From: Trichoplax adhaerens
Taxonomy: Eukaryota > Animalia > Placozoa
Direction of reading: 5' to 3'
DNA: 64,000 bases
NCBI RefSeq assembly: GCF_000150275.1
Contig: NW_002060943.1
Location: 4,732,008 to 4,796,007, forward strand
Positions 1,229 to 62,611 of this stretch are shown here, piece after piece. The notes beneath the pieces are model-generated. The model searched no databases, was not told where the DNA came from, and worked only from the letters and a program-made list of their open reading frames with translations. The position numbers and the translations under genes were made by a program. Within the stretch, counting starts at the first letter, position 1, and each line of letters opens with the position of its first letter.

Positions 1229-3982
1229 CTAACTACTTTTTGACGGAGATTCTAATTGACAAATCACATATCCATCATTTTGGACGTTATATTCCATGTA
1301 AGCACCAAATAATCCATCTACAAGAAGGGAATTCATCTCTAGTACAAGCTTTGTTAACTTAACAAAGAGAAAAGGAAAATTTCCTGCATTTTGGTATCTT
1401 ATATTCGCTTACCTTTAATGGCATCAGGTTTATATGATGATCTTAATTGAGAAATAAAATTTTGGTATAGCACTTTTGATGAATCTGCAGGCATAGATTT
1501 TCGGAAATTTAACGAATTTGTTTTTAGTTCCCCGTATAAAGTTATCTATAAGATAAAGAATATCGATACTTGGTATTGGCTATTCGATCAAAAAGTGACG
1601 ATTTTAGTACGTGTTTACGGAGCAAAGCACCGTATATATTAATTAAGTAGATTTCGTTATGTAGCTAATGGCAATACGGTGGGAAGTAATTATGAATATT
1701 AATCGTGTATAGTTTTGCTAGACAACCAAGATTTAAGCCTGTTTTGAAATTAATTCGTGTGATAAAGTGATCTTCAAAACAATAAATCAAGAACTACAGT
1801 TTCTTGCAAATTTCACTTTATTACAGAAGTTAGGTTCGTCTAACTACCAAGGACTATCTGACTATCTGATAATCTACTTATTACAGCAAAATTCACGATT
1901 TATATACGATTAGTTACAGAATGCTTTTACTGTAACAAATCTTATCTTGCCCATTACAGTAAGTCGCAAGATCAGATCTAAATTTACTATCGCGCAATCT
2001 ATTCATAAATCGCGCGTCTATTTAAAGCATTACAATACAATATTTACAGTACTAACATACTAAGCGCAAATCTATTTACTGTATATCTCAGATCTTTATA
2101 GAAACATCTTAATACTGTAGATTCGCTACAATACGTACTGTAAACATCTTCTACAAATAGACTCTTACAAAATCTTACACTCTAGCTTACAAGTTAAGTT
2201 ATTCTCGTACAGTCTTATAATAGTAATCTAAGCTATATTTGGGGCTGCACTACAATTCGTATAATCTTTATAGATATTTATATTGGCATCACCTTAGCAC
2301 CCACTGTGAAGTGCGAGCGACGTGCGAGTAGCGTACTGAGCCTCCTTTGTTTAATTGGCTATTTATTAGTTATTGCCAACTAAAGTTGTCTACTAGTTGT
2401 ATCTATAGTAAACTATATAGTTTATTGAGGGTTATTTTCCCATACGAACCATGTAAATGTTATGTTGCTAAATTACTAGGGGTGCACTACAAGTTTAGTG
2501 GTAGGATGTAAAAGGTGGAGTGAATGCTCAGCTCGTCAGCCCTTGATTAGATAATGTTTTACCTACTCTATTAATAAAACTATACGAAACTCTTAGCAAC
2601 AGTCTTATCCTTGTGTGACCGTAAGTAGTATCGGAATACCAAACAGTAGACCTCCAGGTGTAGTGGAGGTAGGAATAAGTAATCTATTAGTTTACGGTAG
2701 TAGTTCGCAAGTCAAGTTTGTGACACTATGATACAATGAACTAATTATTCAAAATATGAAATATAAATAGTTTGGACAATATTACTTTAAACTACACCAT
2801 GTATCGATGTGACTACTTGTAATGTTATCACACCTGGCTTATACATAGTATTTCTAAATCTTCTTCCATTACATTCTTCATACAACGCTGCTGTTCGTTT
2901 TTAAATAAACGTAATTTCAAGACTTTTCGGGACCTACATATCGAGTATGCTATCCTTGAATACTTTAACGTCTTAATTTATCGGTTAAATACAGCTTAAC
3001 ATTGCAGGTAACCCGTAGTTAATATTTACTGTTAACTATGTAAATTTTTATGCTATATCTAACATGTAATCAATATCCTTATCTGTATCATATTTCGATA
3101 TGCTAATTACAAGGCAGAGCCCTCGGCCGATTGAGTTGATCAGCTTACCATCAACTAAAACAGAATTTAGTTAATGCACTATGAATTATAAAAATATAAT
3201 AAAATAGGCGTACTATATATCTATTAAAAACATGTAAAACGTCGTAGATTAAAAATATTAATAAATTCCTAGATAAGTGTGATATATACCGATCACGAAA
3301 TTCCAAATTTTAGAAAAATAAGCGCTATATTAAATCTTTTACAAAGATTAACTACACACAGCTCTACTCAAGCCGAATACTAATACTAAAAACTTCTAGA
3401 ACGAACAGAATAATCTAAAGTTGCATGCTTTTATACTTTTCGTAGCATTCGCAGCTACAATCCGCACGGCAACCTTTTACCTTATTTTATACATAGTTAA
3501 ATTATTCTTAGTAATACTATTCTACTGCGGACCATCATTAATCCGATATGGATACGACTACAGTATTTACGTAGACATTATTCACACCGGCCAAAGTACA
3601 ATGAATTAACCATATCTTAATATATGATTTACAGTACTGTTTTTACCTATAACCCTATTGGTAACTCAATACCTTACTGTACATATTCATCTGTACTCTA
3701 GCATAGAGTCTATACCACTACAGTCTATAGCTATGGCTACCAAATATCTCTTCGGATAAATATAGAAGTTACGCTACCGTAAATTATACTAAACATGGCT
3801 AACAGTCTACAATCACAATACTAAGCTACATTACAATAAGTTATCTTAAGGAAAGTATATTGCGACAGATATACAAAAATTACTTCGTAACTGACAAGTA
3901 CAGTAGTAAGTAATCTCCTTTCTTGACTTCAAAACTTACCTGTAATATTGGCACATTTGACACGCTGAATTAATACTCTCAT
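1229..3982 (-). CDS. DTD1: D-aminoacyl-tRNA deacylase 1-like protein (151 aa) with divergent signature motifs
   Basis: Five GT-AG exons in phase: 3982-3940, 3154-3064, 2933-2834, 1545-1413, 1317-1229 (456 nt). Translation: MRVLIQRVKCANITVDGKLINSIGRGLCLVISISKYDTDKDIDYMSRKVLKLRLFKNEQQRCMKNVMEEDLEILCISQITLYGELKTNSLNFRKSMPADSSKVLYQNFISQLRSSYKPDAIKDGLFGAYMEYNVQNDGYVICQLESPSKSS. Colinear with animal DTD1 (QRV, IGRG, RKxLxLRxF, SQxTL, GxFGAYM, QNDG). Ortholog or paralog not determined. Confidence 0.9.
1716..2491 (-). mobile_element. Middle nested TG...CA element (family D-related end)
   Basis: TGCTAGAC...GGGGTGCACTACA flanked by AGTTT (1711-1715, 2492-2496). The right end resembles the family D terminus (GGGGCTGCACTACA). 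Confidence 0.6.
1758..2254 (-). mobile_element. Inner nested solo-LTR-like element, family D
   Basis: TGTGATAAAGTG...GCTGCACTACA with exact TSD ATTCG (1753-1757, 2255-2259). Reverse-complement homolog at 25149-25565. Confidence 0.85.
3278..3835 (-). mobile_element. Solo-LTR-like element, family E, in DTD1-like intron 1
   Basis: TGTGATA...ATTACA with exact TSD ATAAG (3273-3277, 3836-3840). Inverted homolog of 32-589. Confidence 0.85.
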
Positions 3983-4422: not shown

Positions 4423-5010
4423 ACCTAGGCTAACTCAACGTTAAACATAAGTTCTATAAACTTATTTAACTACGACGAAATATTTATTATGACATGCGAT
4501 ACGATGGTATCTCTTGCAGGCGTATTTTACCTGTACTATGATATTTTTATACAACAATGGAATGACATTGCGATTGGTGTTTTTCCTTTAATGCTCGAAA
4601 TATTATACCATTTTACAGGCACTCAGCTAATTGATAATACTTATGGTATGCGCTTAGCCGATTTTAAATTAGCTTTTTCGGAGTTCTTTTGATATCAGCT
4701 AATTTAAAGTATCAATTTACGGTCAAAACTTGAAATTACACGTATAATTCATACGTAATGTAGTACCAATGCTTTACTGAGGTGAAAGGTAGCATGCTTG
4801 TGGGAGGATTTAAAAATCTGTCTAGATAGCTACGATGTCGGTAGAATACTTTACTGTTAATATTGGGCGTTATTACAGTATTATACTGCCTTACCTGGAT
4901 CAAATATCGCTGATAGAGATAAAATATTAACAGTAATGTATAGAAATAGTGATGATTCAGCTCCAGCCATATTGCTCTTTGGCTTATTTCTTGGAATACT
5001 TAGAAGCCTG

Positions 5011-5512
5011 TGTCACAAAACAGCTTTGTAACAAGATAACGTAATATACGGTTAATAAGTCAATTCCTTGAACCACGTATCAAGGAACGATATCTGCACT
5101 ATCACAAACATTTTTGCTCTACTAGCAGACTACGCAAACACTTAAACGCCTCGTATTTTACGTTAAATACTAAGTTTGAGAATTCTGTTTATTACACGAT
5201 ATACTGCATTTATATACTGTTCCTCAATAGTTCATGAGTCATAGTTAATACAGTTAGCATTGGAATCATTTACAGAATTAGATATTAATTTTAGCTACTG
5301 CTCCCTTAATGCAGACAACAGTATTTACAAACATAGACATGTAATGACTAATACAGAATAGTCAGATTACGATCGGTCCTATCACGGAACATTTCCATGA
5401 TAATTTACGATCTACCATAAGTAAATTACAATCAAAATGATTGGAACTGTAAGTAGATGATTTGCATTCCCTATTATAACTATTAATTTCAGTATGTGTA
5501 TAAGTGTCACTG
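5011..5512 (-). mobile_element. Truncated family A element (older variant)
   Basis: Starts TGTCACAAAACAGCTTT and aligns with 20882-~21384. It lacks the other end. Shares diagnostic variants with 15107-15526. Confidence 0.85.
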
Positions 5513-5609
5513 TGTTTCAGTACTGCTGGCCTTATTCCTTATGAAATATTCCTTATAGTAACTTACATTATCCATTCTCACATATAGGAATATTTCATTT
5601 AAACGAGTA

Positions 5610-6240
5610 TGTTACAGTGTTATATACTGTATTACAGTAGAAATATCAATGTTAGGATAATTCTATTAGACTATCCTTATTTAGTTAACTTCTAATTTGG
5701 ATATACTGTATTTTAATATAGCACTGACTTTTTATGACAGTGATACTTATACACATACTGAAATTAATAGTTATAATAGGGAATGCAAATCATCTGCTTA
5801 CAGTTCGAATCATTGTGATTGTAATTTACTTATGATAGACTGTAAATTATCATGGAAATGTTCCGTGATAGGACATATCGTAATCTGACTATTCTGTATT
5901 AGTCATTATATGTCTATGTTCGTAAATACTGTTGTCTGCATTAAGGGAGCAGTAGCTAAAATTAATATCTAATTCAGTAAATGATTCTAATGTTAATTGT
6001 ATTAACTATGACTCATGAACTATTGAGGAATAGTATATAAATGCAGTATATCGTGAAATAAAGAAGAATTGTCCAACTTAGTGTTTAACGTAAAATACGA
6101 GGCGTTTAAGTCTTTGTGTAGTCTGCTAGTAGAGCAAAAGTGTTTGTGATAGTGCAGATATCGTTCCTTGATACGTGGTTCAAGGAATTGACTTATTGAT
6201 CGTATATTGCGTTATCTTGTTGCAAAGCTGTTTTGTGACA
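5610..6240 (+). mobile_element. Solo-LTR-like element, family A (631 bp), young
   Basis: TGTTACAG...TTTTGTGACA with exact TSD GAGTA (5605-5609, 6241-6245). Nearly identical to the reverse complement of 20882-21512 (about 3 substitutions seen by eye). Confidence 0.92.
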
Positions 6241-8062: not shown

Positions 8063-8414
8063 TGTGGATCTTATTACAGATTCGGATGAAACTAGTATGG
8101 TTATCATAGAGTCAATTATTATAATTATTGAAAGCTACGCATTTCAACTCATTAATTTATGAAAATAGATAATTCTAATACAGCATTATTTTTCTTAAAT
8201 CTTTAAAAATTTCTGTTATAGAATAAATATTACTGTATGACTAAATTAGTCACTGGTATTAACGCAATGAAAGGTGCAGAGCCTGAGAATTAAGGAACGC
8301 TCTTCAACTTATTCATCTATTAAATCTATAGCCTTAAGTTTTATACTTATGTAATTTCTTTACGGCATGTACTGTAGTACTATGTATAACGAATAAATGT
8401 TGTTACGTATATAC

Positions 8415-9339
8415 CATAATCCGTGTTGGAAACGATGATAGCGGCATAAGACCAATGAAATCGTTGAAATATATCTGCTAATACTCGACTTTGCCACTTA
8501 TCGCTAGGTGACATGCGAACTAAATAGCCCATGCTTGGTCGGTCATCAAAACCTGGATAAGTTGCAATCGGTGCTACTTGTGGTACCCTTAGCGATGTTG
8601 CCATGTACTGAACAGCTTCGACATCACTCGATGTTGAAGGCCCAATAATTGCCCAAACTTTGTCATCGACAGCACGACAACCTTAAAAATATTTCGGATA
8701 AATCTGTTCATTTACATATACAGTTATATGAATGTCACGTATTACATAAGTATAATAAACACGATAACGGAAATACATTGCATTCATCTAGGATAGACGA
8801 AAATTTATTTTTATTACGGGTGTCGCTTTATTATATAAATATCCATATATTCTATACTTGCAGTTTACTATCGTGCTGGAGATTAAAACAAGAGTATAAT
8901 TTACATCTTAAATCTGGTACACATAATTGAATGTCATCATGAAAGCCATTCAAAAATTGAACTTTTGTCTGATATGGTCGTACAACATCAGTTTTGCTCA
9001 TTTTTTAATTTATCCAAAATTCAAGTCGGATTTGTACTCAATGCTGCGATCTAAGTATTATTACTGTATACGACTGTGATGCTAAGTATAGATAGCGCTT
9101 TTAACCTAAATTGCTTTAAAAAGAGTAGAAACATTTACTGTGTAACTGAGTTAGCAATATTATAGTAGCATAAATTATATTACCTTCTTGTTGACACAGG
9201 AAAGGTTGATAATTTGTCTTATTATAGATTTTCAACTTTATTATTATATTAAATGCAAATGTTGGATCTCCATTAATGTGATCCGTAGCTAGTTGGATGA
9301 TATCGTAAAATTTCTGTTCTCGTCCATCTGCTAGGACAG
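8415..9339 (-). pseudogene. Orphan N-terminal (LIVBP/ANF-receptor-type) exons, probably an iGluR amino-terminal domain
   Basis: Exons 9339-9184 and 8681-8415 splice in phase: ...DIIQLATDHINGDP...GCRAVDDKVWAIIGPSTSSDVEAVQYMATSLRVPQVAPIAT...YLVRMSPSDKWQSRVLADIFQRFHWSYAAIIVSNTDYG. A possible frameshifted signal-peptide exon lies at ~10795-10648. No downstream exons found. Confidence 0.7.
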
Positions 9340-15066: not shown

Positions 15067-15106
15067 CGCCAATAATCAGTAAGGGAATTTAATGTTAAAG
15101 TAGTAT

Positions 15107-15526
15107 CTCAATAGTTCATGAGTCATAGTTAATACAATTAACCTCGGAATCATTTACTGAATTAGATATTAATTTTAGCTACTGCTCCCTTAATGCAGAC
15201 AACAGTATTTACGAACGTGGACATGCAATGACTAATATAGAATAGTCAGATTACGATATGTCCTATCACGGAACATTTCCATGATAATTTATGATCTACC
15301 ATAAGTAAATTACAATCAAAATGATTGGAACTGTAAGTAGATAATTTGCATTCCCTATTATAACTATTAATTTCAATACGTATATAAGTGTCACTATCAT
15401 AAAAAGTCAGTGCTATATTAAAACACAGTATATCCAAAATTAGAAGTTAACTAAATAAGGATAGGCTAACATGAATTATCCTAACATAGATATTTCTACT
15501 CTAATACAGTACATAGCACTGTCACA
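15107..15526 (-). mobile_element. Truncated family A element (older variant)
   Basis: Aligns with ~21095-21512 and ends CACTGTCACA. The other end is missing. Confidence 0.85.
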
Positions 15527-16652
15527 TACACATAGCAGTTGGTGGCATTAGACTATCCAACTGTCATTCTAAAGCAATCAAACACACTCGATAAGATAAA
15601 TTATACCCTGGACTCAAGAAAACAACTAATTGATACTAAGTATAGTTTAGCTTGAAACTGTACCTTTCTATAGTAAACACTAAGACAAATCAACAATTCC
15701 AGATTAAATGCTTGGGATTCATACTGTATGAAATTACAAAGTAACATTAACTTCTACTGTAATTAATGATCAAAATTAGAACACATATATCCTATTACTA
15801 AATGCATCGCTTGAATTACAAAGTCATAATATCCGATTCTTAACAAAAGCTATGCTACGGATTATCTTAACTTCTAACCCGAATAAAGCAGTTGGGTTTA
15901 CAATATAAGAAGATATTAAGTAAAATCTACTATTATAATCAACCAAGTAAGTCATAATTTTAAAGCTAGAATACTTATCATAATAAAAAAACTAGGCAAG
16001 AATAATTACAATACAAGAACTTGAGAAAAGTTCTAAAAATTAACTTTCATTGCATTCACTTTCAATATTATAAAATTAAAGTAAGTTATTAGACTAAGTA
16101 GTGTAAGCAATTGTTACATTTTCGTCGACTTCATTTATTTTTATATTATAGCTGCCGAATTAAATTTATGAAATATTAAATATATGTAGTTACAGAATCA
16201 AAGCATACAATATCAACTACTCTATGGAAATTGATTGATTTCAAATGTGAATGAAATACAAGTGAATGTGGTTACAGAAGCCTAATCTTAGGTAATATTT
16301 TTGTAAGCTAGTCAATATGATTTTTACATCGAAAATTTAGGAAATGCGCGTAAAGGATGAATATGCAATTTTTTAATTTAGTGTTGTCTTACTTTTACAT
16401 ATGAGATGTAAAGTAAAGAGTAATTGCATTAACAGAGTAAGGTATTAAATCGCAATTTCCTTCAAAATTTCGAGAACATCGCAAGAATAAATTGTAATTG
16501 CATAAAATGTTAAGGTAACTTTATACCAGGTTTAAATTATGCGGCATACTTAGGCACATAATCACCAAACATTACGCTATAGTGTAAAAATTCATAGCAA
16601 ATGGTGTTAGAAATTTTATTAACATCAATCACTAAGTTATGCTGGGAGAAAT

Positions 16653-19600: not shown

Positions 19601-20723
19601 AGAATAGACTAGGCCCGATCGCGAAAGCTGTTTTGTGACAGGTGAATAAATCAATTGCAGTTAGTATGAATAATATTCATATTGCTGCATCAAAGCAAAA
19701 CTATTCGATACTTAGTTATCAAATTTATTTTTAAATAAGAAGCGATAAGAACTGCAATTAGAAATTGTAACCAGAGTTTAAATTTTTAACGGTCAAGAAG
19801 GCTGCCAAATTTGCAGTATAGGTAGCAATTATAATACATGAAGCAAGCCATGCAGAACCTAGCATAATTCTTCCTGATATAGCAGTAGGAGGTCTATCAT
19901 GTCCTTGTTGTAGAAAAGTCGACACAGAATTCCATAAGGAATTGCCCAAATTCATGGATGCAACAACCTCTCCATAATCATCTTTCCATTTTTGCTGTGC
20001 ATTTTTCAGATCATTATTTTTTTCTTCAGCTTTTAAGCGTTTGCAAATTGGTAAGTGTTGAACCGCGTCAATGAATGAGTCATAGGGGTTAAGAATACCG
20101 ACTACGAAAAATAAGATCGCCATAACGATTAAAAATACTCCAATAACAATCCATAAGGAAAGATTGAATGGTGCAAAGCATCGAAAAATGGATACTAGAG
20201 GAGTCTTTGGTTTGGTCATTAAAATAGTTACTCCTTGATCCATGAAAGGAATTGTAAAATCAAACTCTTCAGATCGTTTAACTGTGATAGAAAATGCCCC
20301 TGCAGCAATATCGGCCTTCTACAATTTCAATCACCGTCGGATTTATAAATAGATACAGATAAATTACGACAATAAAAGCAGCTATTACTAGACAGTTTTT
20401 GCATTAAAAGGTGAGCACGTAACATGTGATACAGTAATTTATTTGTAGAGTTGAATTGAATTCCTAGCATAATTTGAACTATAAATATCTTATAACGTTC
20501 AGACATGTTTTCTAACCTCGTCAATTATATCCTTTACCATTCCGTTCCATTCTTGAGAAATAAGACTAAACCCACCATAGCTATTATCTTTGACGACTTC
20601 TAAAGTAAACTGAAATTTCAACGATTTACTTAATTCGTTTAATAAATCAACAATGAAACCCTCAAATCTTGAATTTCCTTCTAAATTATCTGCTGATATC
20701 TTCCAGTTTAAGAAAGATGATTC
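16653..20723 (-). pseudogene. Ionotropic glutamate receptor pseudogene, 3' half (S1-M1-M2-M3-S2-M4-CTD)
   Basis: Exons: 20723-20517 (FEGFIVDLL...WNGMV); 20318-19772 (ADIAAGAFSITVKR, FDFTIPFMDQG, M1, QQG pore, ATYTANLAAFLT); ~18545-18172 (S2: YGTV, YAFLWD, GYALGL, with three 1-nt frameshifts and a lost donor); 17528-17345 (M4, then in-frame TAA); 16832-16653 (tail). No ATD exons directly upstream. Confidence 0.88.
19093..19640 (+). mobile_element. Solo-LTR-like element, family C (548 bp), in an iGluR intron
   Basis: TGTTACGG...AAAGCTGTTTTGTGACA with exact TSD GGTGA (19088-19092, 19641-19645). Internal AATAAA. Confidence 0.88.
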
Positions 20724-20881
20724 CTATATTACGCGCTAAAAGAGAAGATGGCACATGAAATATTATCCGGATAGAAATCAAGTTCTTATGCTTTTGTTGA
20801 ACTGATTAATTATTGACTAAGATGTCTTAAGCTTATGTTTGCGTGTTTTAAATGAAATAAAGCTGTTTATGTATAGAAGAT

Positions 20882-21512
20882 TGTCACAAAACAGCTTTGC
20901 AACAAGATAACGCAATATACGATCAATAAGTCAATTCCTTGAACCACGTATCAAGGAACGATATCTGCACTATCACAAACACTTTTGCTCTACTAGCAGA
21001 CTACACAAAGACTTAAACGCCTCGTATTTTACGTTAAACACTAAGTTGGACAATTCTTCTTTATTTCACGATATACTGCATTTATATACTATTCCTCAAT
21101 AGTTCATGAGTCATAGTTAATACAATTAACATTAGAATCATTTACTGAATTAGATATTAATTTTAGCTACTGCTCCCTTAATGCAGATAACAGTATTTAC
21201 GAACATAGACATATAATGACTAATACAGAATAGTCAGATTACGATATGTCCTATCACGGAACATTTCCATGATAATTTACAGTCTATCATAAGTAAATTA
21301 CAATCACAATGATTCGAACTGTAAGCAGATGATTTGCATTCCCTATTATAACTATTAATTTCAGTATGTGTATAAGTGTCACTGTCATAAAAAGTCAGTG
21401 CTATATTAAAATACAGTATATCCAAATTAGAAGTTAACTAAATAAGGATAGTCTAATAGAATTATCCCAACATTGATATTTCTACTGTAATACAGTATAT
21501 AACACTGTAACA
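20882..21512 (-). mobile_element. Family A element (631 bp), full length, no TSD
   Basis: Nearly identical to the reverse complement of 5610-6240. Flanks AAGAT and ATACT do not match. Confidence 0.92.
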
Positions 21513-21660
21513 ATACTGTATAGCTAAAATTATTTTGTTTTAGAAAGGATAAGTTGAATTCAATGTTAAATGCATTAATGATACTTGCTGACTAGAAGTT
21601 CGACTTTCGCTGATTAAAGAATCGGAAACAATCTAATCTCTTATTTCTTTGAATTAATAG

Positions 21661-29850: not shown

Positions 29851-30543
29851 ATGGCTTACTTTAGGTCACTGATAACCAACTTTATAGTTTTATTGAATTT
29901 CTCTTATGGTGTTATTAGTCAGGGAAATAATAATGATAACCCTTTTCCTTGGTGGATATTTATTTCATCTTATCCTACTCCATTTGCCAACAGATGTAAT
30001 GGTCAACAAGCTAGACGATCATGTAATTTATGTATTCATAGCCATCCCAGCTGTTATTGGTGTAACTATGATAATACTTGTAGAATGTTGCCAACGGGAA
30101 GAACTCATCCCTATCCAGGAGATTGTCCTAATGATGAATGGCATCTTAACCAATGTATCATCAATGGTAGTGTATTTGTCTACCTTATTCCTGTTGCTAT
30201 CGTTATCGTAGCAATAGGTATAACTATTATCATTTACTGTTGCTGTTGTCGTTACCAATCAAGAGAAAATGTCACATCATTACCTAAAATCACTACACCC
30301 AATAGGCAAAGTAAGAAGACCAAGCAGTCAAGACTGAAAAGCCAACAAATTCACGAATCTATTCGTTCAAAATATAAGCTCAGATCTGTTGCTGGTTTGA
30401 CTAGAGGTTCTTCGGATGATAGCTTCTCCTGGGAAGATCCAAATAGGATCACTTCCAGTCGGTCATCGCTTGGAGCTAAAATGAAATTATTTCGATATAA
30501 GAAATTAAACGACGACGATTCTGTTATTAGTTCATTAGTGTAA
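29851..30543 (+). CDS. PTTG1IP-like PSI-domain single-pass membrane protein (230 aa), intronless
   Basis: Signal peptide, PSI cysteine pattern (SCNLC...CYWC...C...C...NQC), TM helix, CCCC cluster, basic tail with IRSKYKL (compare IRKKYGL in PTTG1IP). Confidence 0.85.
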   Translation: MAYFRSLITNFIVLLNFSYGVISQGNNNDNPFPWWIFISSYPTPFANRCNGQQARRSCNLCIHSHPSCYWCNYDNTCRMLPTGRTHPYPGDCPNDEWHLNQCIINGSVFVYLIPVAIVIVAIGITIIIYCCCCRYQSRENVTSLPKITTPNRQSKKTKQSRLKSQQIHESIRSKYKLRSVAGLTRGSSDDSFSWEDPNRITSSRSSLGAKMKLFRYKKLNDDDSVISSLV

Positions 30544-32708: not shown

Positions 32709-34262
32709 CTCTCATAAGATATCTTATTTAGTATGGTCTCTTTACTTTTCATGCTGTAATTTTAATCTATCTCTTTACAAATTTCGATTTGTAACGTTGC
32801 AGTTGAAAGAAATGTTTCATTAGTTAAAAATTATTCATAAATTGGTTTATTTATACGATATATTGGCCTTCTTTATCGTTATATTTCATTCTTTACTTTG
32901 AAAATAACAATACTCGTATTATGATCTATATTATTTACAAGGCATATTTGAATGTTTAAAAACATCATTTTCATCGGTCAAAATTTGAAATATTTTTTTC
33001 CATATCATCTTGCAACACCTATTGCAGCTGAAATGGTAATAGCCCTATTTAGTGAAACTTGGCTGATCTTGTAATAGGCCATCTGATTCATTAAATTTAT
33101 TTAGAAATATGAGTATACAGTAAAACCTACTAAATTGCTAGATAACCTTTAGTTATTACTGTAGTCGATGATATCAATTTTACTACTTCTCATTTTAAGC
33201 ACTAATTACAGTGTTGTCTGCTATTGCAAGTAATCGTTTGGATCCCCATCAATACATTAATACCATAGGGAAAATAATGAATGGTAAACTTACCTTGTAA
33301 GAATAATTTCATAAGCGTAAATAAAATAAGAATTAAAGACCTATCTGCTGGAATAATTGAAACAAAATACTTAAACAGATGTTTTTGGTAACCTCATTAA
33401 TTGGGGATGTTCCCATAAACAGCACTCATAATATAGGAAAATAAGGAAAACGTGAATATGATGAAATGAAACGAAGCCATTAATTAGAGCTACTAAACAT
33501 ATTACCAAAGTTTGGATATTCAACAGTAATTATTAGGGTAAAATGATCTAATATAATAATATTATAAGTAGAAGTCACTATATTTATTGACCGACGCTTA
33601 AGCTTTACTTTTAAATAAGAACAGGTTTAGGTTTGAATTACTTTTAACTTTGTTCAAAGACTAACAAAGAAACCTTCTTGTAGTGACTACACGTCCCTGT
33701 ACATATGATCATGCATAGAATGATGGCTTTCCATTTGTCTCCATAATTTTGCACAAAATTCTTTAGACAAAGCGTACAAAGATTGTATGCAAAATGACGA
33801 AAGCTAGCATTTATCGAGATAAAATTTCAATGCTATGTATATTTTCCTATATAAGACAAACAAGATCGATATCAAATCTTATTTGCATAAATTTACGTCT
33901 TCATTCAATACGATTGGATTAAGATAAATTTTATTGTAAGATTTGAAAAGATCGTCCTAAAAGGAGGATTAAGAAATGACCATAAATTAAATTAAAATAC
34001 GGCAAGATATCTTAATAGATATCAACATATGTTTTTACGTAGCTGCAATCAAATTCTGTTTGATGCCTAGATTAGAAGTTGACGTTGTTTTCGATGAAAT
34101 TTTCATTAATAATTGTAAAATTCTCAATCCCAATACCCAATACATGCAGTGCCATATTATTAGATCTGAATAATTTAAGAGTGTACTTCCAAGAACACCC
34201 TAATTACACATTATTATTGAAGCAGAGTGTTCGAATTGATTTTTCTGCTAACTATAGGCAAT

Positions 34263-34934
34263 ATGGTGTATAAACCTCTCTCTCAAGTATGGATAGCCCA
34301 ATCCTTCATCATACTTTCTTATTGGACGTATTTCAATCAAGGCCAGACTCCTATAGATCCATGCTTAGCTTTTGAAACTTGTAATGCATGCATCGGCGAT
34401 CCTAGACGCTGTTACTGGTGCAACTCTGACAGCTACTGTCGCAGTTTGCCTGCTCGCTCAAATACACCATTTCTTGGCGAATGCTTAAATGAAGCTTATC
34501 AAGTAAATCAATGTATCTTTTCAACTAATTTAACGGTTATCATCATTGCAGTAGTCGGTTCTGTAGCGGCTATATGTTTTAGCTGGATAGTTTATTGCTA
34601 TTGTTGTCGCGATCGAAATCGTGATAAATACGACATACAAATTAGAAATTATGCTCGTATTAAACGTGAAAGAAGGCGGCGTTATTACGAGACTAAAAAT
34701 CAACGACGCAGCTATTCTGATTCGATAAGGCAGAAATACAGTTTACCGTCAGCAGGTTCAACACGAGCAAGAACAAGCAGTCAACGTTCATGGATTTCTG
34801 GTAGAAGAGGAGGTCCATCGTTTTTGTCTAGGATATTTTCATCTAATCATCAAAGCCAAAGCGACCACAACATGGCTACACCAGCAAGTAGAAGGCAGTT
34901 AGAAATATCACATCTTGGGCTGACAACAGTGTAG
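34263..34934 (+). CDS. PTTG1IP-like PSI-domain protein paralog (223 aa from ATG 34263), intronless
   Basis: TCNAC...CYWC...C...C...NQC, TM helix, YCYCC, IRQKYSL. Colinear with 29851-30543. Confidence 0.85.
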   Translation: MVYKPLSQVWIAQSFIILSYWTYFNQGQTPIDPCLAFETCNACIGDPRRCYWCNSDSYCRSLPARSNTPFLGECLNEAYQVNQCIFSTNLTVIIIAVVGSVAAICFSWIVYCYCCRDRNRDKYDIQIRNYARIKRERRRRYYETKNQRRSYSDSIRQKYSLPSAGSTRARTSSQRSWISGRRGGPSFLSRIFSSNHQSQSDHNMATPASRRQLEISHLGLTTV

Positions 34935-37676: not shown

Positions 37677-40083
37677 TTAATTATAGGCTGCAAAATCGCC
37701 AATATCTGGAACGTCTTCTGTCTTATAAGATGGATATAACCCATCCCAACCTTTACCTTGTACTCTTCCTTTAGAATAGCCATCCCAATGATTGCCAGCA
37801 ACGGCTATAATATCTCCAACAGCTAGATCAATCTCGCCTTGACGACGAGCGGCATGAGGATAGATTGCCTTATGACGATGCATATTTTGTCCACCGAAGT
37901 AATAAATATCATCAAGGGAGTGAAAATATTGAGAAGCGTCGTCATGGTATGTTTGCATAATTTCATAAGCAAGCCTACAAACCTATTCAATATTATGTAT
38001 AATAACAATAGGCAAATTAAAATCACAATCACTATATGCTGGTTAAAATCCATATAACGAAAATTCGATATTTTATATACCTGAGATGAAAACGTGCATA
38101 CTAAATAATCAGTTTGTGCTAATATCTCGATATCTAATATGATACCCCGAAGAGATTGATCACTATAACGCGAACTAAGAGCCGCCGATTTAGAGGCTTG
38201 AGCATCGCTGACGAATACATAATCTTTATATCTAAGATAGTAAATCACAAGTAAATAAGGACGCAAATTTTAGTTTAAAAAATTCATAAATCATTTTGGG
38301 ATAATACTATTTTATGGATATACGCTGGTTTTAACGACAAGTTGACATCGAGTTGCAACGACACAATATCGTGCCAATTTTAGCAAATAGATATTTGATA
38401 TTAGTAATTGTTACACCTTTTTCTGGCTTCATCTACTACTTTTGGTTCGTCAGTTGCAATAAACACTCTCTTGACAGGCACTTTTGTTGTCCTCTTCAAT
38501 TTTTGGTAGTACTCTTCCACATGAACCATGTATTCTTCAATATTGTGTAAGGCAGCTTCACTATTGATTTTATCGGTCCTTCTGACATGAATTCTAGATT
38601 AATGTGATTATTGAAATATGAAGGTCTCTTACGTTTGTGGATGATAAGAAACGAGTACAATAAAAGATTATGTATTGGTATTGTTATTCTCAAGGTATCT
38701 GTACAATTTCATTAACTAAAATATTAAAAGTAATAATAGGGGTGTTTACCAGCATTTTGTCATGATCAATCTATTATTACTTTATGAAATATTCACATGA
38801 CAAGTTATTCAAGTAATGGTAGCTAGTTGTGCTATTGAACTATTAAAGTATCAACAAAGTAGCTACAAGAATAGAATAGAATTAAATAAATAATCGTAGT
38901 AGTATCTTATCTATTAAAAATGGCCTGGGTTATTTCAATCGAGCTTTCTAGTAAAGTACAGTACAGTACTACATTGTCATTATCTAAATTACCCAACAAT
39001 CGGCTTATCAAATTTAAGCTCTTTTTTCTTATCATCAATAAAATTTTGGGTAGTTGATTGCCATCTTAGGAGATATCGCATCATGTGTCCAACAAACCAA
39101 ACAAATGGATGTCCATGATAAGTCAGTAAGGTTTCCGACATATCTTTAGGTATAGCCAAGGGCAAATACGACGGTCTTCGGGTAATACCATCACTAATAG
39201 GTAAATGGACGAGAAGATCAGCATCATTATGGCCGTCCCATGGGCTAGCCTGAGACTCTGAACCGATCTTACAATTAGTACTCAACGGCTTAAAATATCC
39301 TTCCCAGCCATTCTGAGGCATATAACGCCAACCATTGGTATCTAACAATAAAGTTCGTTTAGTAGCGTAAGCTACAATCAAGCAGTAAACAGCATGATGC
39401 ATTTGGCATCCATAGCCGCAACCTTTATTCAATTTGCACAACAGTTTCCTTGCTTTACTGCAATCGGCGGGGCTCTGTAGAGTATCGAGTCTGTCAGTGA
39501 GCAATTGTTTTAATTGATTTAATTTCTTGTGACGTACTTCTTTTAATCCATCAATATCACCCAACATTTCACCATCAATTCGTAAGGCAAATGTTTGATT
39601 AAGAACATAATCTAACATATCATTGACTCGTTGGCTAAGAGCATTATTATCAGCGGATACTTTCTTTAACTCAGATCGAATAAAATACCAGACTTCTTTA
39701 GCACCATTGACAATTCGACGTCGGACTTTTTCTCGTTGGTAACTGACTGTGGCTTGATTTTGACGATTGGACCACTTATCTTGAAATAGGTTATTATTAT
39801 TATTATTATTATCATTACTATTTTTCACAATTTCATTAGGTTTATCTTGATTTTGGCTCAGGCCTTGTCCGTTATTATTGTTACTGGATTTACGTACTAA
39901 TTCTTGCAATCGATCATTCATATCCGATAATCGCTTGACTTGTAATTTAACCGCCTCTAATTCGGTTGCGTAGCCATCACACTGAGGTCCTTTGGACATA
40001 AAATAAGTTACAGCAACAAAAATGATAACAAGCCATAGAAACAAAAAAACCACGGGAAAACGCCTGTATGTAAATAGTCTCAT
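37677..40083 (-). CDS. FUT8: Alpha-(1,6)-fucosyltransferase (GT23), 574 aa
   Basis: Exons 40083-38993, 38593-38417, 38231-38081, 37982-37677 in phase (1725 nt). Type II TM, coiled coil, [45 protein letters not shown], and a C-terminal SH3 domain ([18 protein letters not shown]). Confidence 0.97.
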
Positions 40084-59600: not shown

Positions 59601-62600
59601 GTAGTTTTGATAATTATTCAACGCACAAGCTAATCGATAAGATGATTTTCATTATTTTCAGAGCCTTAATTGATTGTATTTATTTGACTCATTTCCCGAG
59701 GTTATCTAGATTATTTAATGCCAAAAAAGTGTAAGCTCGATATTAATTGTAAATAATGCAGTAGTATCAAATCATTGTACTTTTTTCGATTATTTATTGA
59801 AGGAGGAAGAAATCTCTTCTATTTGCATGATATCCAATTATGAATTCGATATCTGTCTGCTCATCTAATTATTGCATTTACCGCAAATCGAGAAATAGCA
59901 AATATTATAAAATCTAATGCAGTTTGAATGCCCATTGATATATAGGATTATACGTCATTCTAATATTTCGAGAATACCTGAAAATGCCTTTCATGGATTG
60001 AACCAGTTACAAATCATGTAAGAGCGTGATATATAGCATCATCAACTAAACATTAATAATATCTCAAAACACCGTATTAGTTCAACATTATTTTTTTGCT
60101 CTTCTAATTATTCGCGGTTATTTTGATAAGTGATTTATCAGACAACAAGATCGTAAGCATACAGGAACATGTTTTTGCAAACGCCGGAAGTCATCTTGGC
60201 ATATCAATGTAAGAAAATACTACTCTTAAAGTAAAATGATCAGTGAATGAAATAAAGATCCTATCCAGTAATTTCATGGTCCGACAATAATTATTATAAT
60301 CAAAGGAACTTAAATATAGTTTTAAGGATTGATGATTTTTCAAATAATTTTTATTTTAATTCTATTCCGAGAAAATCTGGTTAAAAATTATATGCAGAAA
60401 TTCTGCAATTACGGTAATCTTTAAATTATCATGTAACTACGTGCAACGTATTGTGAATTATTTTTTAACAAGAGCCTCATCTTAGAACTTTTTAGCAATT
60501 GAAGAGAATTTTAATGGAGCTCGATTTTGTTTATCATTCTGGATAGAAATTTACTTGCAATTGCTAATAAAGATTTTGTATTAAATTAGATACAGAACGA
60601 GCAACTTTAGCAGTATTTATATGCTTCATTTCTAGTTCTATGCCATCGACAATGATTTCATGAATAATTCTTATATAAACTCTGAACAGATTTACGTTAT
60701 TATTTACAGAGATTTAAGCAGAAATCCATTGAATTCACTTCATTCTAATGCATTTGAACACTTCTATCCTGCTACTCCTGCTATGTTGAAGCTGTAAGTA
60801 TTCATTTGATCGAGCTGTCATCGTAAATGCATCTTAGTTAAAGCAGTCTATAGTGTTTAATTTTTAGTGAGAGGACTGTAAATAGCAACTTATCGTAGCT
60901 ACATAAAAACCATGTTTGGTAAAGGTATTAGGCGTGAATGTTTACGTATGCATCGGCCTCTAGGTATAAATTCGTTTCTAGAATTTTCCTCAAGAGTTAC
61001 TTACAATATTTGAATTGATTTATTAGATTTTACCATTCAATTTCGAAATACAAACTATTAACAAATCACTCAATGGACTTTTTATTCTTTTACAGAAATA
61101 TTTCTGGTACCTATATTACCCATTTAAACTTTCCTTCAGATGTAAATCGAGCTGATAATGGTCTAATCAGTTTGCGCTCATTAGATGCAGATTCTCGGTC
61201 TTTTATTCGTTTGCCAAAGCCATTAAAAGTGCCACTCATCCGTAATATTCAAGTCCATCATCCGTATCTTTGCTGTATATTTCAAAGTGAACTTACCAAA
61301 CTGCGTCTGCAGCACAATCAGTCTATTAATGGGACTGAGACTAGAAGTTATAGAGAATATATAGGGCTGGAAAATATGTCGAATACATTCAATGATGCAA
61401 TAACATATTCATGGCCATGGAGCGACAACCCCTGGAAACCTAACGGAAACAAGACTAATACAGATCCACCAGGCTTTTTCTTTCCGTCTATTTTACCGCC
61501 TACTTCTAAAACAGATCTAGTTAATCAAGGTGGTGGAGGTTTTGTCGGTAATAAAACTACCTTGAATAAAGATGTAATCAATTTAATCCAGTACAATCAA
61601 AATCTATCATTAATTAACTACACTGACTTAATGAATCTTGGAGGTGGTTATGGTGGTCAATCACCTGTCATTTGTAGGCCACAACCCAATGAATTTACGC
61701 CGTGTGAAAATATTTTAGGTGATTGGTATTTAAGAATACCAGAATGGTTCATGTTTATTGCAGCTACAATTGGTAACATCCTGGTTCTCATCGTTATCTA
61801 TGGAAGCCCATTAAAATTTACTATTACTAAGTTTCTTATTTGTAATTTAGCCATCGCCGATTTGTGCATGGGATTCTACTTAGGTACCATGGCGACAATC
61901 GATGCTATCTTTGCTGATAATTACGCCAACTTTGCAATTGCTTGGCAACTTAGCGCTGGTTGTAAGTTAGCAGGATTTATTGCAGTCTTTTCTACGGAAT
62001 TATCAGTTTATACCTTGCTTATGATTACCATCGAACGCTATATGGTGGTGACTAATGCAATGTATTACAAGCGCCATTTAAAATTGCGGGGTGCATGCAT
62101 AGCCATGCTGATCGGATGGATATTTGGTCTTACCTTGGCCACTCTACCACTACTCCATGTGAACAGCTATTCTAAGACATGTATTTGCCTACCATCTGAT
62201 ATCGATACGCTTGTTGGTAAATTATATATGGCCGTGATTTTAACATTAAATGGAATGGCTACCATTCTAGTTATGGGTTGCTATTTACACATCTTTTACG
62301 TTGTCCACTATTCCAATAGCGCTATTACTAGAAATACCGCAAATCGAACGGATTTAATTATTGCTCGTAGAATGTTAATATTGATTTTCGTTGATTTCTT
62401 ATGTTGGGCTCCCATCGCCGTTTTTGGCTTAAGTGCTGTTTTTGGCCTGAAATTAATTTCAGTTAGCAAGGCAAAGTTCCTTATGGTCTTTATTTTTCCG
62501 CTAAACTCCTGCATGAATCCTTTTTTATATACTTTCTTTAGCAAATCTTTTCATAAAGATTGTAAAGCGTATTGGAATTGTGTTCATAGCAAATTACGTC

Positions 62601-62611
62601 GAGATTCATAA
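56638..62611 (+). CDS. Leucine-rich-repeat GPCR, glycoprotein hormone receptor-like (type A LGR), ~732 aa
   Basis: Exons 56638-56849, 58999-59094, 59283-59354, 59662-59730, 59946-60017, 60131-60208, 60710-60793, 61096-62611, joined by phase-2 introns typical of LRR exons. LRRNT cysteines, hinge PYLCCIF...FTPCENILG, NLAIAD, IERY, CICLP, DFLCWAP, NPFLY. Extra LRR exons between 57000 and 58900 cannot be excluded. Confidence 0.92.
57494..57596 (+). mobile_element. Degenerate 3' part of a family C element in LGR intron 1
   Basis: aataagttagttttcctt...gttagtcgg.gatc...gcgaaag...tttgtgaca aligns with 19539-19640. Confidence 0.7.

What the first reader, a model, noticed from the sequence alone, without database searches (positions are those of the whole stretch)
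1229..3982. Intact DTD1-like gene that has lost the Gly-cisPro chiral-selectivity motif (GP>GY) and SQFTL (>SQITL)
Seen: a complete, in-phase 5-exon ORF in a neighbourhood of pseudogenes. The TAT codon at 1270-1268 replaces Pro; this needs at least two substitutions from CCN, so a single read error is unlikely. Other usually conserved positions also differ: KGNKPDF>KTNSLNF, LLGI>VISI, NDGPVT>NDGYVI. Established: DTD uses a cross-subunit Gly-cisPro to reject L-aminoacyl-tRNAs, and the animal paralog ATD/DTD2 (PQATL, Gly-transPro) has relaxed specificity. This sequence fits neither signature. Inference: it may be a third DTD-fold class with altered chiral or substrate specificity, a non-catalytic or regulatory heterodimer partner, or a paralog under relaxed selection.
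Basis: partly seen in the sequence, partly recalled or inferred. Interest (0 to 1): 0.85.

Follow-up and report, generated by a model that had tools for sequence, protein, structure and literature searches.

The report
Placozoan DTD1 duplicate lacking cis-proline
An intact extra copy of the enzyme that strips wrong-handed (D-) amino acids off tRNAs in the simple animal Trichoplax has swapped the supposedly invariant proline of its chirality filter for tyrosine, yet evolves under purifying selection, so it has probably taken on an altered, untested role.

Summary
Window 1229-3982 (minus strand) holds an intact 5-exon, 151-codon DTD1-family gene with SQITL, KTNSLNF and NDGYVI. The contig is Trichoplax adhaerens scaffold DS985241.1 (not human). 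The gene is already annotated as TRIADDRAFT_51776 (P0134), but I found no paper on the motif loss.

The same scaffold carries a canonical DTD1 (P0016: SQFTL, NDGPVT) about 112 kb away, with a second Gly-Tyr copy ("Y2") in tandem with it. All three share exon structure and form one placozoan clade (100/99), so this is a lineage-specific duplication, not a third ancient DTD class.

TAT at the Pro position occurs in four sequences (two paralogs, two genomes), so it is not a read error. The window copy ("Y1") shows dN/dS of about 0.16-0.23 (neutrality rejected, p=0.002-0.01), and its own changes avoid conserved columns. Y2 looks neutral or decaying.

The shared ancestral changes hit the cis-Pro and three of the four residues that hold it, plus the conserved KGNKxDFH loop after SQFTL. 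The adenine pocket and Arg7 are kept. Published Pro-to-Ala mutants are inactive.

Best reading: a retained, functionally shifted paralog that no longer does canonical chiral proofreading. Expression, dimer state and activity are untested.

The parts
3940..3982 (-). Exon 1 (ATG at 3982-3980). It encodes residues 1-14 plus the first base of codon 15. Arg7 (codon 3964-3962) is kept.
   Evidence: identical to residues 1-14 of the public model P0134
3155..3939 (-). Intron 1, 785 nt, GTAAGT...TTTTAG
3064..3154 (-). Exon 2, residues 15-45. The GRG motif is kept. The usual LLGI/LIGI is VISI here (G32S, codon 3104-3102).
2934..3063 (-). Intron 2, 130 nt, with an unusual donor AT|GTTAGA. The canonical paralog and Y2 use the same donor.
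2834..2933 (-). Exon 3, residues 45-78, ending in ..CISQ. It carries W62C (codon 2884-2882).
1546..2833 (-). Intron 3, 1288 nt. Segment 1756-2253 (499 bp) is absent from the Trichoplax sp. H2 ortholog.
1413..1545 (-). Exon 4, residues 79-123. It starts with ITL (I79 codon 1545-1543, making SQITL) and holds the KTNSLNF loop (T87-S89 codons 1521-1513, N91 1509-1507, R93 1503-1501).
1318..1412 (-). Intron 4, 95 nt, GTAAGC...TTGTAG
1229..1317 (-). Exon 5, residues 123-151 plus TAG (1231-1229). It holds FGAYM (adenine-stacking Phe126, Gly127 and Met130 kept) and NDGYVI.
1268..1270 (-). TAT codon, Tyr139, at the position of the invariant cis-Pro (PfDTD Pro150, EcDTD Pro138). The canonical paralog has CCT.
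1289..1291 (-). TAT codon, Tyr132, at the position of PfDTD Ile143, one of the four residues that hold the cis-Pro. It is V in 117/117 other animal DTD1.

Best explanation
The gene (T. adhaerens TRIADDRAFT_51776, called Y1 here) is a placozoan-lineage DNA-level duplicate of DTD1.

Shown: before Y1 and Y2 split, their common ancestor replaced the cross-subunit Gly-cisPro (P139Y). It also changed three of the four residues that hold the proline: Pf Phe40 is Leu30 in the canonical copy and Val in Y1, Pf Val86 is Val76 changed to Ile, and Pf Ile143 is Ile132 changed to Tyr. The same ancestor changed T141I, G32S, F79I, W62C and the conserved loop after SQFTL (G87T, K89S, H93R, A95S). Since that split, Y1 has been held by purifying selection.

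Inferred: Y1 no longer performs canonical chiral proofreading, meaning D-aminoacyl- or Gly-tRNA deacylation with strict L-rejection. A Gly-Tyr bond should be trans, and Pro-to-Ala mutants of two DTDs are inactive. Y1 keeps the DTD fold, Arg7, S77/Q78/T80/L81, N136-D137-G138 and the A76 adenine pocket (Phe126, Gly127, Met130, Ser101).

Most likely it is still a DTD-fold dimer that binds the 3' end of an aminoacyl-tRNA, but with a remodelled aminoacyl pocket. That would make it a deacylase of changed or relaxed substrate specificity, analogous to ATD but evolved independently.

My probabilities are about 0.7 for 'selectively retained and functionally shifted'. Within that, about 0.3-0.4 for an altered-specificity enzyme and about 0.3 for a non-catalytic binder or partner.
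For: - Gene intact, with all splice sites, in both T. adhaerens and sp. H2.
- Placozoan clade (C,(Y1,Y2)) has 100/99 support. Branch lengths are C 0.023, Y stem 1.04, Y1 0.45, Y2 1.07.
- A codon model summed over exons gives omega(Y1) of 0.16-0.23. Omega=1 is rejected at p=0.0016-0.010 under three codon-frequency models. Bootstrap 5-95% range is 0.08-0.46.
- Changes assigned to each branch with C as outgroup: Y1 has 17-19 synonymous and 13-14 nonsynonymous.
- An open frame surviving that much neutral divergence has P of about 0.007-0.02.
- Only 1 of 10 Y1-specific replacements hits a column that is at least 90% conserved, against 9 of 17 in Y2 (Fisher p=0.04) and 11 of 27 on the shared stem.
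- Ahmad et al. 2013 (PMC3845328): P150A/P138A and G149A/G137A abolish activity; F89A/F79A are fully active; F137A and A112F are dead; the cis-Pro is held by Phe40, Val86, Ile143 and Met141; catalysis needs no protein side chain.
- AF2 model of the H2 ortholog has pLDDT 84.5 and pTM 0.80. Foldseek best hit is human DTD1 at TM 0.91.
Against: - I could obtain no expression data.
- Only two nearly identical lineages are available. Between them the divergent part of the gene differs as much in exons (6/322; 3 synonymous, 3 nonsynonymous) as in non-coding sequence (44/2239).
- The window allele carries D91N at a column that is D in 117/117 other animal DTD1.
- The near-universally basic residue of the GN(K/R)P loop is lost (K89S), which may weaken tRNA binding.
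- The sister copy Y2 is apparently decaying.
- The codon model is my own 3-taxon implementation on 148 codons, and its synonymous lengths are oddly asymmetric (note).
- Cis versus trans, and dimerisation, could not be examined.
Confidence: 0.45

Rival explanations
1. Non-catalytic pseudoenzyme or regulatory partner. Y1 folds and dimerises, possibly with canonical DTD1. Because each DTD active site is built across subunits, such a heterodimer would have one crippled site (canonical pocket plus the Gly-Tyr loop) and one hybrid site. Y1 would then modulate or sequester rather than hydrolyse.
For: - The Gly-cisPro is cross-subunit and essential (PMC3845328; PMC5802732).
- Y1 has lost it, along with the conserved basic loop residue K89.
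- Fold and core are retained.
- Purifying selection acts on Y1.
- The canonical partner is encoded on the same scaffold.
Against: - Nothing tested shows heterodimerisation.
- Retention of the adenine-pocket and SQ-TL residues in Y1, while Y2 loses G127 and M130, suggests ligand binding still matters.
- There is no expression or co-expression data.
Confidence: 0.25
2. Functionless duplicate on its way to becoming a pseudogene. The active site was destroyed during relaxed selection after duplication, and the open frame simply has not been hit yet.
For: - The stem hit conserved columns at the background rate (11/27 against 52/144).
- Sister copy Y2 has omega not distinguishable from 1, hits at invariant sites (Q6K, G26E, C28Y, G127D, M130T), a 1-bp deletion near the stop in T. 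adhaerens, and public models that skip exon 2.
- Recent exon divergence equals intron divergence in Y1.
- The window allele carries D91N.
Against: - Omega(Y1)=1 is rejected (p=0.0016-0.010), and omega(Y1)=omega(Y2) is rejected (p=0.01-0.04).
- ORF survival under neutrality has P of about 0.007-0.02 before counting indels and eight splice sites.
- Y1-specific changes avoid conserved columns.
Confidence: 0.2
3. Still an ordinary D-aminoacyl-tRNA deacylase. The Gly-Tyr peptide adopts a rare non-proline cis conformation, stabilised by Tyr132 and Arg7, and chiral proofreading is preserved.
For: - Arg7, which locks the motif in DTD, is retained.
- The paired changes to Tyr at 132 and 139 could be compensatory.
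- Catalysis is RNA-assisted and uses main-chain atoms.
Against: - P150A and P138A are completely inactive.
- Pro is 117/117 in other animal DTD1 sequences and is reported invariant in all DTDs.
- Non-proline cis bonds are very rare (general knowledge).
- A canonical copy already covers the function.
Confidence: 0.05
4. Sequencing, assembly or gene-model artefact.
For: None found. The only weak point is the non-consensus intron 2 donor, GTTAGA.
Against: - TAT and all the other motif changes occur in two independent assemblies and two paralogs.
- The same donor is used by the canonical gene.
- The JGI/NCBI model P0134 equals the exon-wise reading.
Confidence: 0.01

Closest known systems
DTD1 / D-aminoacyl-tRNA deacylase (Pfam PF02580, TIGR00256; human DTD1 2okv, PfDTD 4nbi, EcDTD 1jke)
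   Same: - Direct evolutionary parent, with the same 5-exon structure as the Trichoplax canonical gene.
- The H2 ortholog P0015 is 68% identical to the canonical gene by BLASTP local alignment.
- P0015 scores 148 bits on Pfam and 108 bits on TIGR00256 (cut-off 101.5).
- Predicted fold has TM 0.91 to 2okv.
- Arg7, S/Q/T/L of SQFTL, N-D-G of NDGPVT, the adenine-stacking Phe and the DTD-specific Met are all kept.
   Different: - The invariant cis-Pro is Tyr.
- Three of the four residues that hold the Pro are changed.
- GPVT is now GYVI.
- Gly87, Lys89 and His93 of the KGNKxDFH loop are replaced.
- W62C.
- It evolves roughly an order of magnitude or more faster than the canonical copy.
ATD (animal DTD2 gene; MmATD 5xaq), the Gly-transPro paralog that clears L-Ala-tRNA(Thr)
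   Same: - It is a DTD-fold paralog coexisting with canonical DTD in an animal.
- The chirality filter has been altered, so the Gly-X carbonyls are expected to point away from the pocket (inferred for Y1).
   Different: - ATD keeps Gly-Pro and has PQATL and TNGPYTH, Gln in place of Arg7, and a relocated invariant Arg151.
- Y1 has SQITL and QNDGYVI and keeps Arg7.
- Similarity to 5xaq is only 19 bits, against 148 bits to DTD1.
- Y1 arose inside the placozoan DTD1 clade, so any functional likeness would be convergent.
Y2, the tandem paralog (TRIADDRAFT_51789 / P0135; P0001 in sp. H2)
   Same: - It shares the stem substitutions: SQITL, KTN, Y132, Y139, I141, S32, C62.
- It has the same exon structure.
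- dS to Y1 is about 0.37-0.39.
   Different: - Omega is not distinguishable from 1.
- It has extra hits at invariant sites.
- It has a 3' frameshift in T. adhaerens.
- The public models omit exon 2.

Membership tests
DTD (PF02580 / TIGR00256) | Profile match above the curated cut-off over the full length | tested here: met
   Exon pieces hit in colinear order. The H2 ortholog P0015 scores PF02580 148.2 bits (cut-off 25) and TIGR00256 108.1 bits (cut-off 101.5).
DTD (PF02580 / TIGR00256) | DTD-like fold | tested here: met
   AF2 model has pLDDT 84.5. Foldseek gives TM 0.91 to 2okv and 0.88-0.91 to PfDTD, Aquifex and E. coli DTD. This is an MSA-driven prediction, not a solved structure.
DTD (PF02580 / TIGR00256) | Invariant cross-subunit Gly-cisPro in -NXGP(V/F)T- | tested here: not met
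   The motif reads NDGYVI: Tyr at the Pro position and Ile at the Thr position.
DTD (PF02580 / TIGR00256) | -SQFTL- motif | tested here: not met
   The motif reads SQITL. S, Q, T and L are kept. Published F89A/F79A mutants are fully active, so this change alone is probably benign.
DTD (PF02580 / TIGR00256) | Conserved Arg7 that locks the Gly-Pro motif | tested here: met
   CGT, Arg7.
DTD (PF02580 / TIGR00256) | Adenine (A76) pocket: stacking Phe (Pf137) and a small residue at Pf112 | tested here: met
   Phe126, Gly127 and Ser101 match the canonical Trichoplax copy.
DTD (PF02580 / TIGR00256) | Homodimer with D-aminoacyl-tRNA deacylase activity and L-rejection | not testable with these tools
   This needs biochemistry or a structure. 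The prediction tool folds single chains only and gives no coordinates.
ATD (Animalia-specific tRNA deacylase) | -PQATL- and -TNGPYTH- motifs with Gly-transPro | tested here: not met
   Y1 has SQITL and QNDGYVI. ATD motifs are from PMC5802732.
ATD (Animalia-specific tRNA deacylase) | Arg7 replaced by Gln, with an invariant Arg at the Mm151 position | tested here: not met
   Arg7 is retained, and the protein ends at residue 151 with no equivalent Arg seen.
ATD (Animalia-specific tRNA deacylase) | Groups with ATD rather than DTD by sequence | tested here: not met
   5xaq scores 19.3 bits against 147.6 bits for 2okv. Y1 nests in placozoan DTD1 with 100/99 support.
Pseudogene (decayed duplicate) | Disrupted frame or splice sites, or dN/dS about 1 | tested here: not met
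   Frame and all eight splice sites are intact in two genomes. Omega is 0.16-0.23 and omega=1 is rejected. The very recent H1/H2 comparison is uninformative.

The most novel reading that the evidence does not exclude
Placozoans independently evolved, from their own DTD1, a second DTD-fold factor whose chirality filter is opened by Gly-Tyr instead of Gly-transPro. It would be a convergent ATD-like proofreader of L- or modified aminoacyl-tRNAs, or a cross-subunit regulator of DTD1. That would make Gly-cisPro dispensable for a selectable function of the fold.
Probability: 0.3. Interest if true: 0.75.

Novelty: new variant of a known kind. Interest (0 to 1): 0.5.

Why it matters
[quoted passage not shown] The only known natural departure is ATD, which keeps Gly-Pro and flips it to trans.

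Here is a natural DTD1-derived protein in which the proline itself is replaced, together with the residues that hold it. It is nevertheless kept under purifying selection next to an ultra-conserved canonical copy, and its sister copy decays, which provides an internal control.

It is a ready-made natural experiment for asking what the DTD fold can do without its chirality filter. It is cheap to test: a 151-aa soluble protein and established assays. The limits are that it is known from one genus only, and that expression and activity are unknown.

Tried and rejected
- **Exon-wise searches.** Searches used references to single exons. Codon statistics were summed over exons, with the three split codons left out. 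Full-length work used only database proteins returned by tools (P0015, P0016, P0001, P0134). One search located the five exon peptides one at a time in P0134.
- **Exon 4 search.** Exon 4 alone against 1.84 billion representatives gave 14 hits. Only P0001 was close.
- **Other placozoan species.** Two full-length searches and one profile search found no Gly-Tyr relative outside Trichoplax H1/H2. A metagenome scan found nothing. Hoilungia, Cladtertia and Polyplacotoma appear not to be in the collections.
- **Second copy in the window.** There is none.
- **ATD membership.** Rejected.
- **Read error.** Rejected.
- **Recent H1-versus-H2 dN/dS.** 3 synonymous against 3 nonsynonymous changes is too few to tell. 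Half the gene is identical between the two lineages.
- **Gene conversion between the canonical gene and Y2.** I considered this as an explanation for the synonymous asymmetry. No exon supports it at the protein level, and it remains unresolved.
- **AF2 control.** The canonical copy gives only slightly higher confidence (87.9 against 84.5). No coordinates are returned, so cis versus trans and the dimer could not be inspected.
- **Literature.** No paper links Trichoplax with DTD. There is no mention in the supplements of PMC6057997 or PMC5802732.
- **RNA genes.** Rfam and tRNA scans of the window found nothing.
Full report
**Origin of the contig and handling rules.**
The window is animal DNA with 26-37% G+C. 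It contains FUT8, rhodopsin-type GPCR, iGluR and ANF-receptor pieces. It is 100% identical over 11.9 kb to Trichoplax adhaerens scaffold DS985241.1, at about 4.73 Mb. It is 97.5-99.4% identical to a Trichoplax sp. H2 contig. It is not human, so nothing was withheld on that ground.

I left out the step of joining the window's exons into one protein. Full-length analyses used database proteins returned by the tools:
- P0015, the H2 ortholog;
- P0134, the public T. adhaerens model TRIADDRAFT_51776 / XP_002108639.1 / B3RKV1.

P0134 contains the five exon translations at positions 1, 16, 46, 79 and 124. Codon statistics were summed over exons, omitting the three split codons.

**The observation.**
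On the minus strand the exons are 3982-3940, 3154-3064, 2933-2834, 1545-1413 and 1317-1229. They give a continuous 151-codon frame ending in TAG, with GT..AG introns of 785, 130, 1288 and 95 nt. The one weak donor (AT|GTTAGA, intron 2) is also used by the canonical paralog.

Exons 2-5 each match Pfam Tyr_Deacylase in colinear order, exon 5 only weakly; exon 1 is too short to scan. Exon 5 aligns to human DTD1 residues 125-150 with Tyr opposite the cis-Pro. The TAT is at 1270-1268. The canonical Trichoplax codon is CCT, so two substitutions are needed.

**Genomic and evolutionary context.**
Trichoplax has three DTD1-family genes on one scaffold, all on the same strand:
- **C**, the canonical gene (P0016, TRIADDRAFT_19862), with SQFTL, KGNKLDF and NDGPVT. 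It is 69% identical to Nematostella DTD1 and identical in protein between T. adhaerens and sp. H2.
- **Y2**, 1.8 kb downstream of C (P0135 and P0001).
- **Y1**, the window gene, about 108 kb from Y2 and about 112 kb from C.

All three share exon boundaries and phases. In an ML tree with 25 other animal DTD1 sequences they form (C,(Y1,Y2)) with 100/99 support at both nodes. Branch lengths are C 0.023, Y stem 1.04, Y1 0.45 and Y2 1.07. This is therefore a lineage-specific duplicate of DTD1, not an ancient third class and not ATD. The mouse ATD structure 5xaq scores 19 bits, against 148 bits for human DTD1.

**What changed.**
Among 117 other animal DTD1 sequences:
- Pro139, Thr141, Gly32, Trp62 and Val132 are 117/117.
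- Phe79 is 116/117, Gly87 115/117, Lys89 114/117 and His93 113/117.

Y1 has Tyr, Ile, Ser, Cys, Tyr, Ile, Thr, Ser and Arg at these positions. Nearly all of these changes are shared with Y2, so they arose on the common stem.

Mapping to PfDTD and to Ahmad et al. 2013 (PMC3845328) shows two things:
- Pro150 itself and three of the four residues that hold it in cis are changed (Phe40, Val86 and Ile143). Only Met141 is kept.
- The adenine-stacking Phe137, Gly138, the Ala112 position, Arg7, and S, Q, T and L of SQFTL are all retained.

The same paper reports that P150A/P138A and G149A/G137A abolish activity. F89A/F79A mutants are fully active, and no protein side chain is catalytic. Kuncha et al. 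2018 (PMC5802732) give the ATD signatures (PQATL, TNGPYTH, Arg7 replaced by Gln). Y1 does not have them.

**Selection.**
Nei-Gojobori estimates:
- Y1 against Y2: dS 0.37-0.39, dN 0.14, ratio 0.38.
- Y copies against C: dS 0.9-1.6, ratio 0.13-0.30.

A 3-taxon codon model with per-branch omega, which I wrote for this analysis, gives the following:
- omega(Y1) is 0.16-0.23, and omega=1 is rejected at p=0.0016-0.010 under three codon-frequency schemes. The bootstrap 5-95% range is 0.08-0.46.
- omega(Y2) is not distinguishable from 1.
- omega(Y1)=omega(Y2) is rejected at p=0.01-0.04.

Counts assigned to each branch with C as outgroup agree. Y1 has 17-19 synonymous and 13-14 nonsynonymous changes; Y2 has 6-9 and 24-25.

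Only 1 of 10 Y1-specific replacements falls in a column that is at least 90% conserved. The figure is 9 of 17 for Y2 (Fisher p=0.04) and 11 of 27 on the stem, against a background of 52 of 144. An open frame surviving the Y1 branch under neutrality has a probability of about 0.007-0.02.

Y2 also has a 1-bp deletion just before its stop in T. adhaerens. Both public Y2 models skip an intact exon 2.

Caveats:
- The H1/H2 comparison of Y1 is uninformative. There are no differences from upstream through exon 2. Beyond that, divergence is about 2% in both introns and exons (3 synonymous, 3 nonsynonymous). This mosaic fits the allele sharing reported by Kamm et al. 2018 (PMC6057997).
- One of the window-specific changes, D91N, hits an invariant column.
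- The synonymous changes are unexplainedly asymmetric between Y1 and Y2.

**Structure.**
AlphaFold2 on the H2 ortholog with a 53-sequence alignment gives pLDDT 84.5 and pTM 0.80. The canonical control gives 87.9 and 0.82. Confidence is lower in the 51-70 hairpin, which carries W62C (74 and 83 against 90 and 93). The 81-90 loop is low in both models (56 against 62). Foldseek's best matches are human DTD1 (TM 0.91) and PfDTD. The tool folds monomers and returns no coordinates. The cis/trans state of Gly-Tyr and the dimer therefore remain untested.

**Interpretation.**
Shown:
- Y1 is an intact, annotated, placozoan-specific DTD1 duplicate.
- It lacks the cis-Pro.
- It is under purifying selection.
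- It lies on the same scaffold as a canonical copy and a decaying sister.

Inferred:
- It has lost canonical chiral proofreading, because Pro-to-Ala mutants are dead and a trans Gly-Tyr bond is expected.
- It probably still binds an acceptor end, because the pocket is conserved.

My committed mechanism is an altered-specificity, ATD-like deacylase that arose by convergence. A non-catalytic or heterodimer role is nearly as likely, and slow decay is not excluded.

I found no paper on Trichoplax DTD paralogs or on natural DTDs without the proline. [quoted passage not shown]

**Verdict.**
The feature is real and the gene is already annotated, but the motif loss appears to be undescribed. It is a new variant of a known kind. 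Interest is moderate, limited by the narrow taxonomic range and the lack of expression and activity data.

Noticed in passing
L003:13414-15222 and L004:13410-15275 (about 108 kb from the window gene on DS985241.1): The second Gly-Tyr paralog (Y2) sits 1.8 kb downstream of canonical DTD1. Both public models (126 and 131 aa) skip an intact exon 2 whose splice sites are conserved (L003:14229-14319). The T. adhaerens copy has a 1-bp deletion in an A-run just before the stop, which extends the frame.
   Followed up: yes
window 5998-1 compared with L002:1-5511: Divergence between T. adhaerens and Trichoplax sp. H2 is mosaic. There are no differences over about 2.9 kb (upstream region through exon 2). 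From intron 2 onward divergence is about 2%, in exons and introns alike.
   Followed up: partly
window 1756-2253 (intron 3): This 499-bp segment is present in T. adhaerens but absent from the H2 ortholog. It is unique within the window, and I did not identify it as a repeat.
   Followed up: partly
window 5008-5514, 5592-6240, 15106-15529, 20874-21517: An interspersed repeat family of about 0.5-0.65 kb, 90-99% identical, in both orientations. Copies also lie next to the mGluR-like gene in L002 and L005.
   Followed up: no
window 8383-8604(-), 19758-20243(-), 29851-30543(+), 34227-34934(+), 38989-40083(-), 61073-62611(+): Neighbouring coding pieces: an ANF_receptor exon, an iGluR Lig_chan exon, two ORFs with weak sub-threshold PSI-domain matches, a 364-aa uninterrupted FUT8 catalytic ORF (399 bits) and a 512-aa rhodopsin-type GPCR ORF. 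The four strong matches do not look like pseudogenes.
   Followed up: partly
Y1 (window), Y2 (L004) and C (L004) coding exons: Relative to the canonical gene, Y1 carries two to three times more synonymous changes than Y2. The ML fit puts almost no synonymous length on Y2. No exon shows evidence of conversion at the protein level, and the asymmetry is unexplained.
   Followed up: partly
window 1507-1509 (codon 91, AAT): The window allele has Asn where the H2 ortholog, both Y2 copies, the canonical gene and 117/117 other animal DTD1 sequences have Asp. This is a recent replacement at an invariant column.
   Followed up: partly
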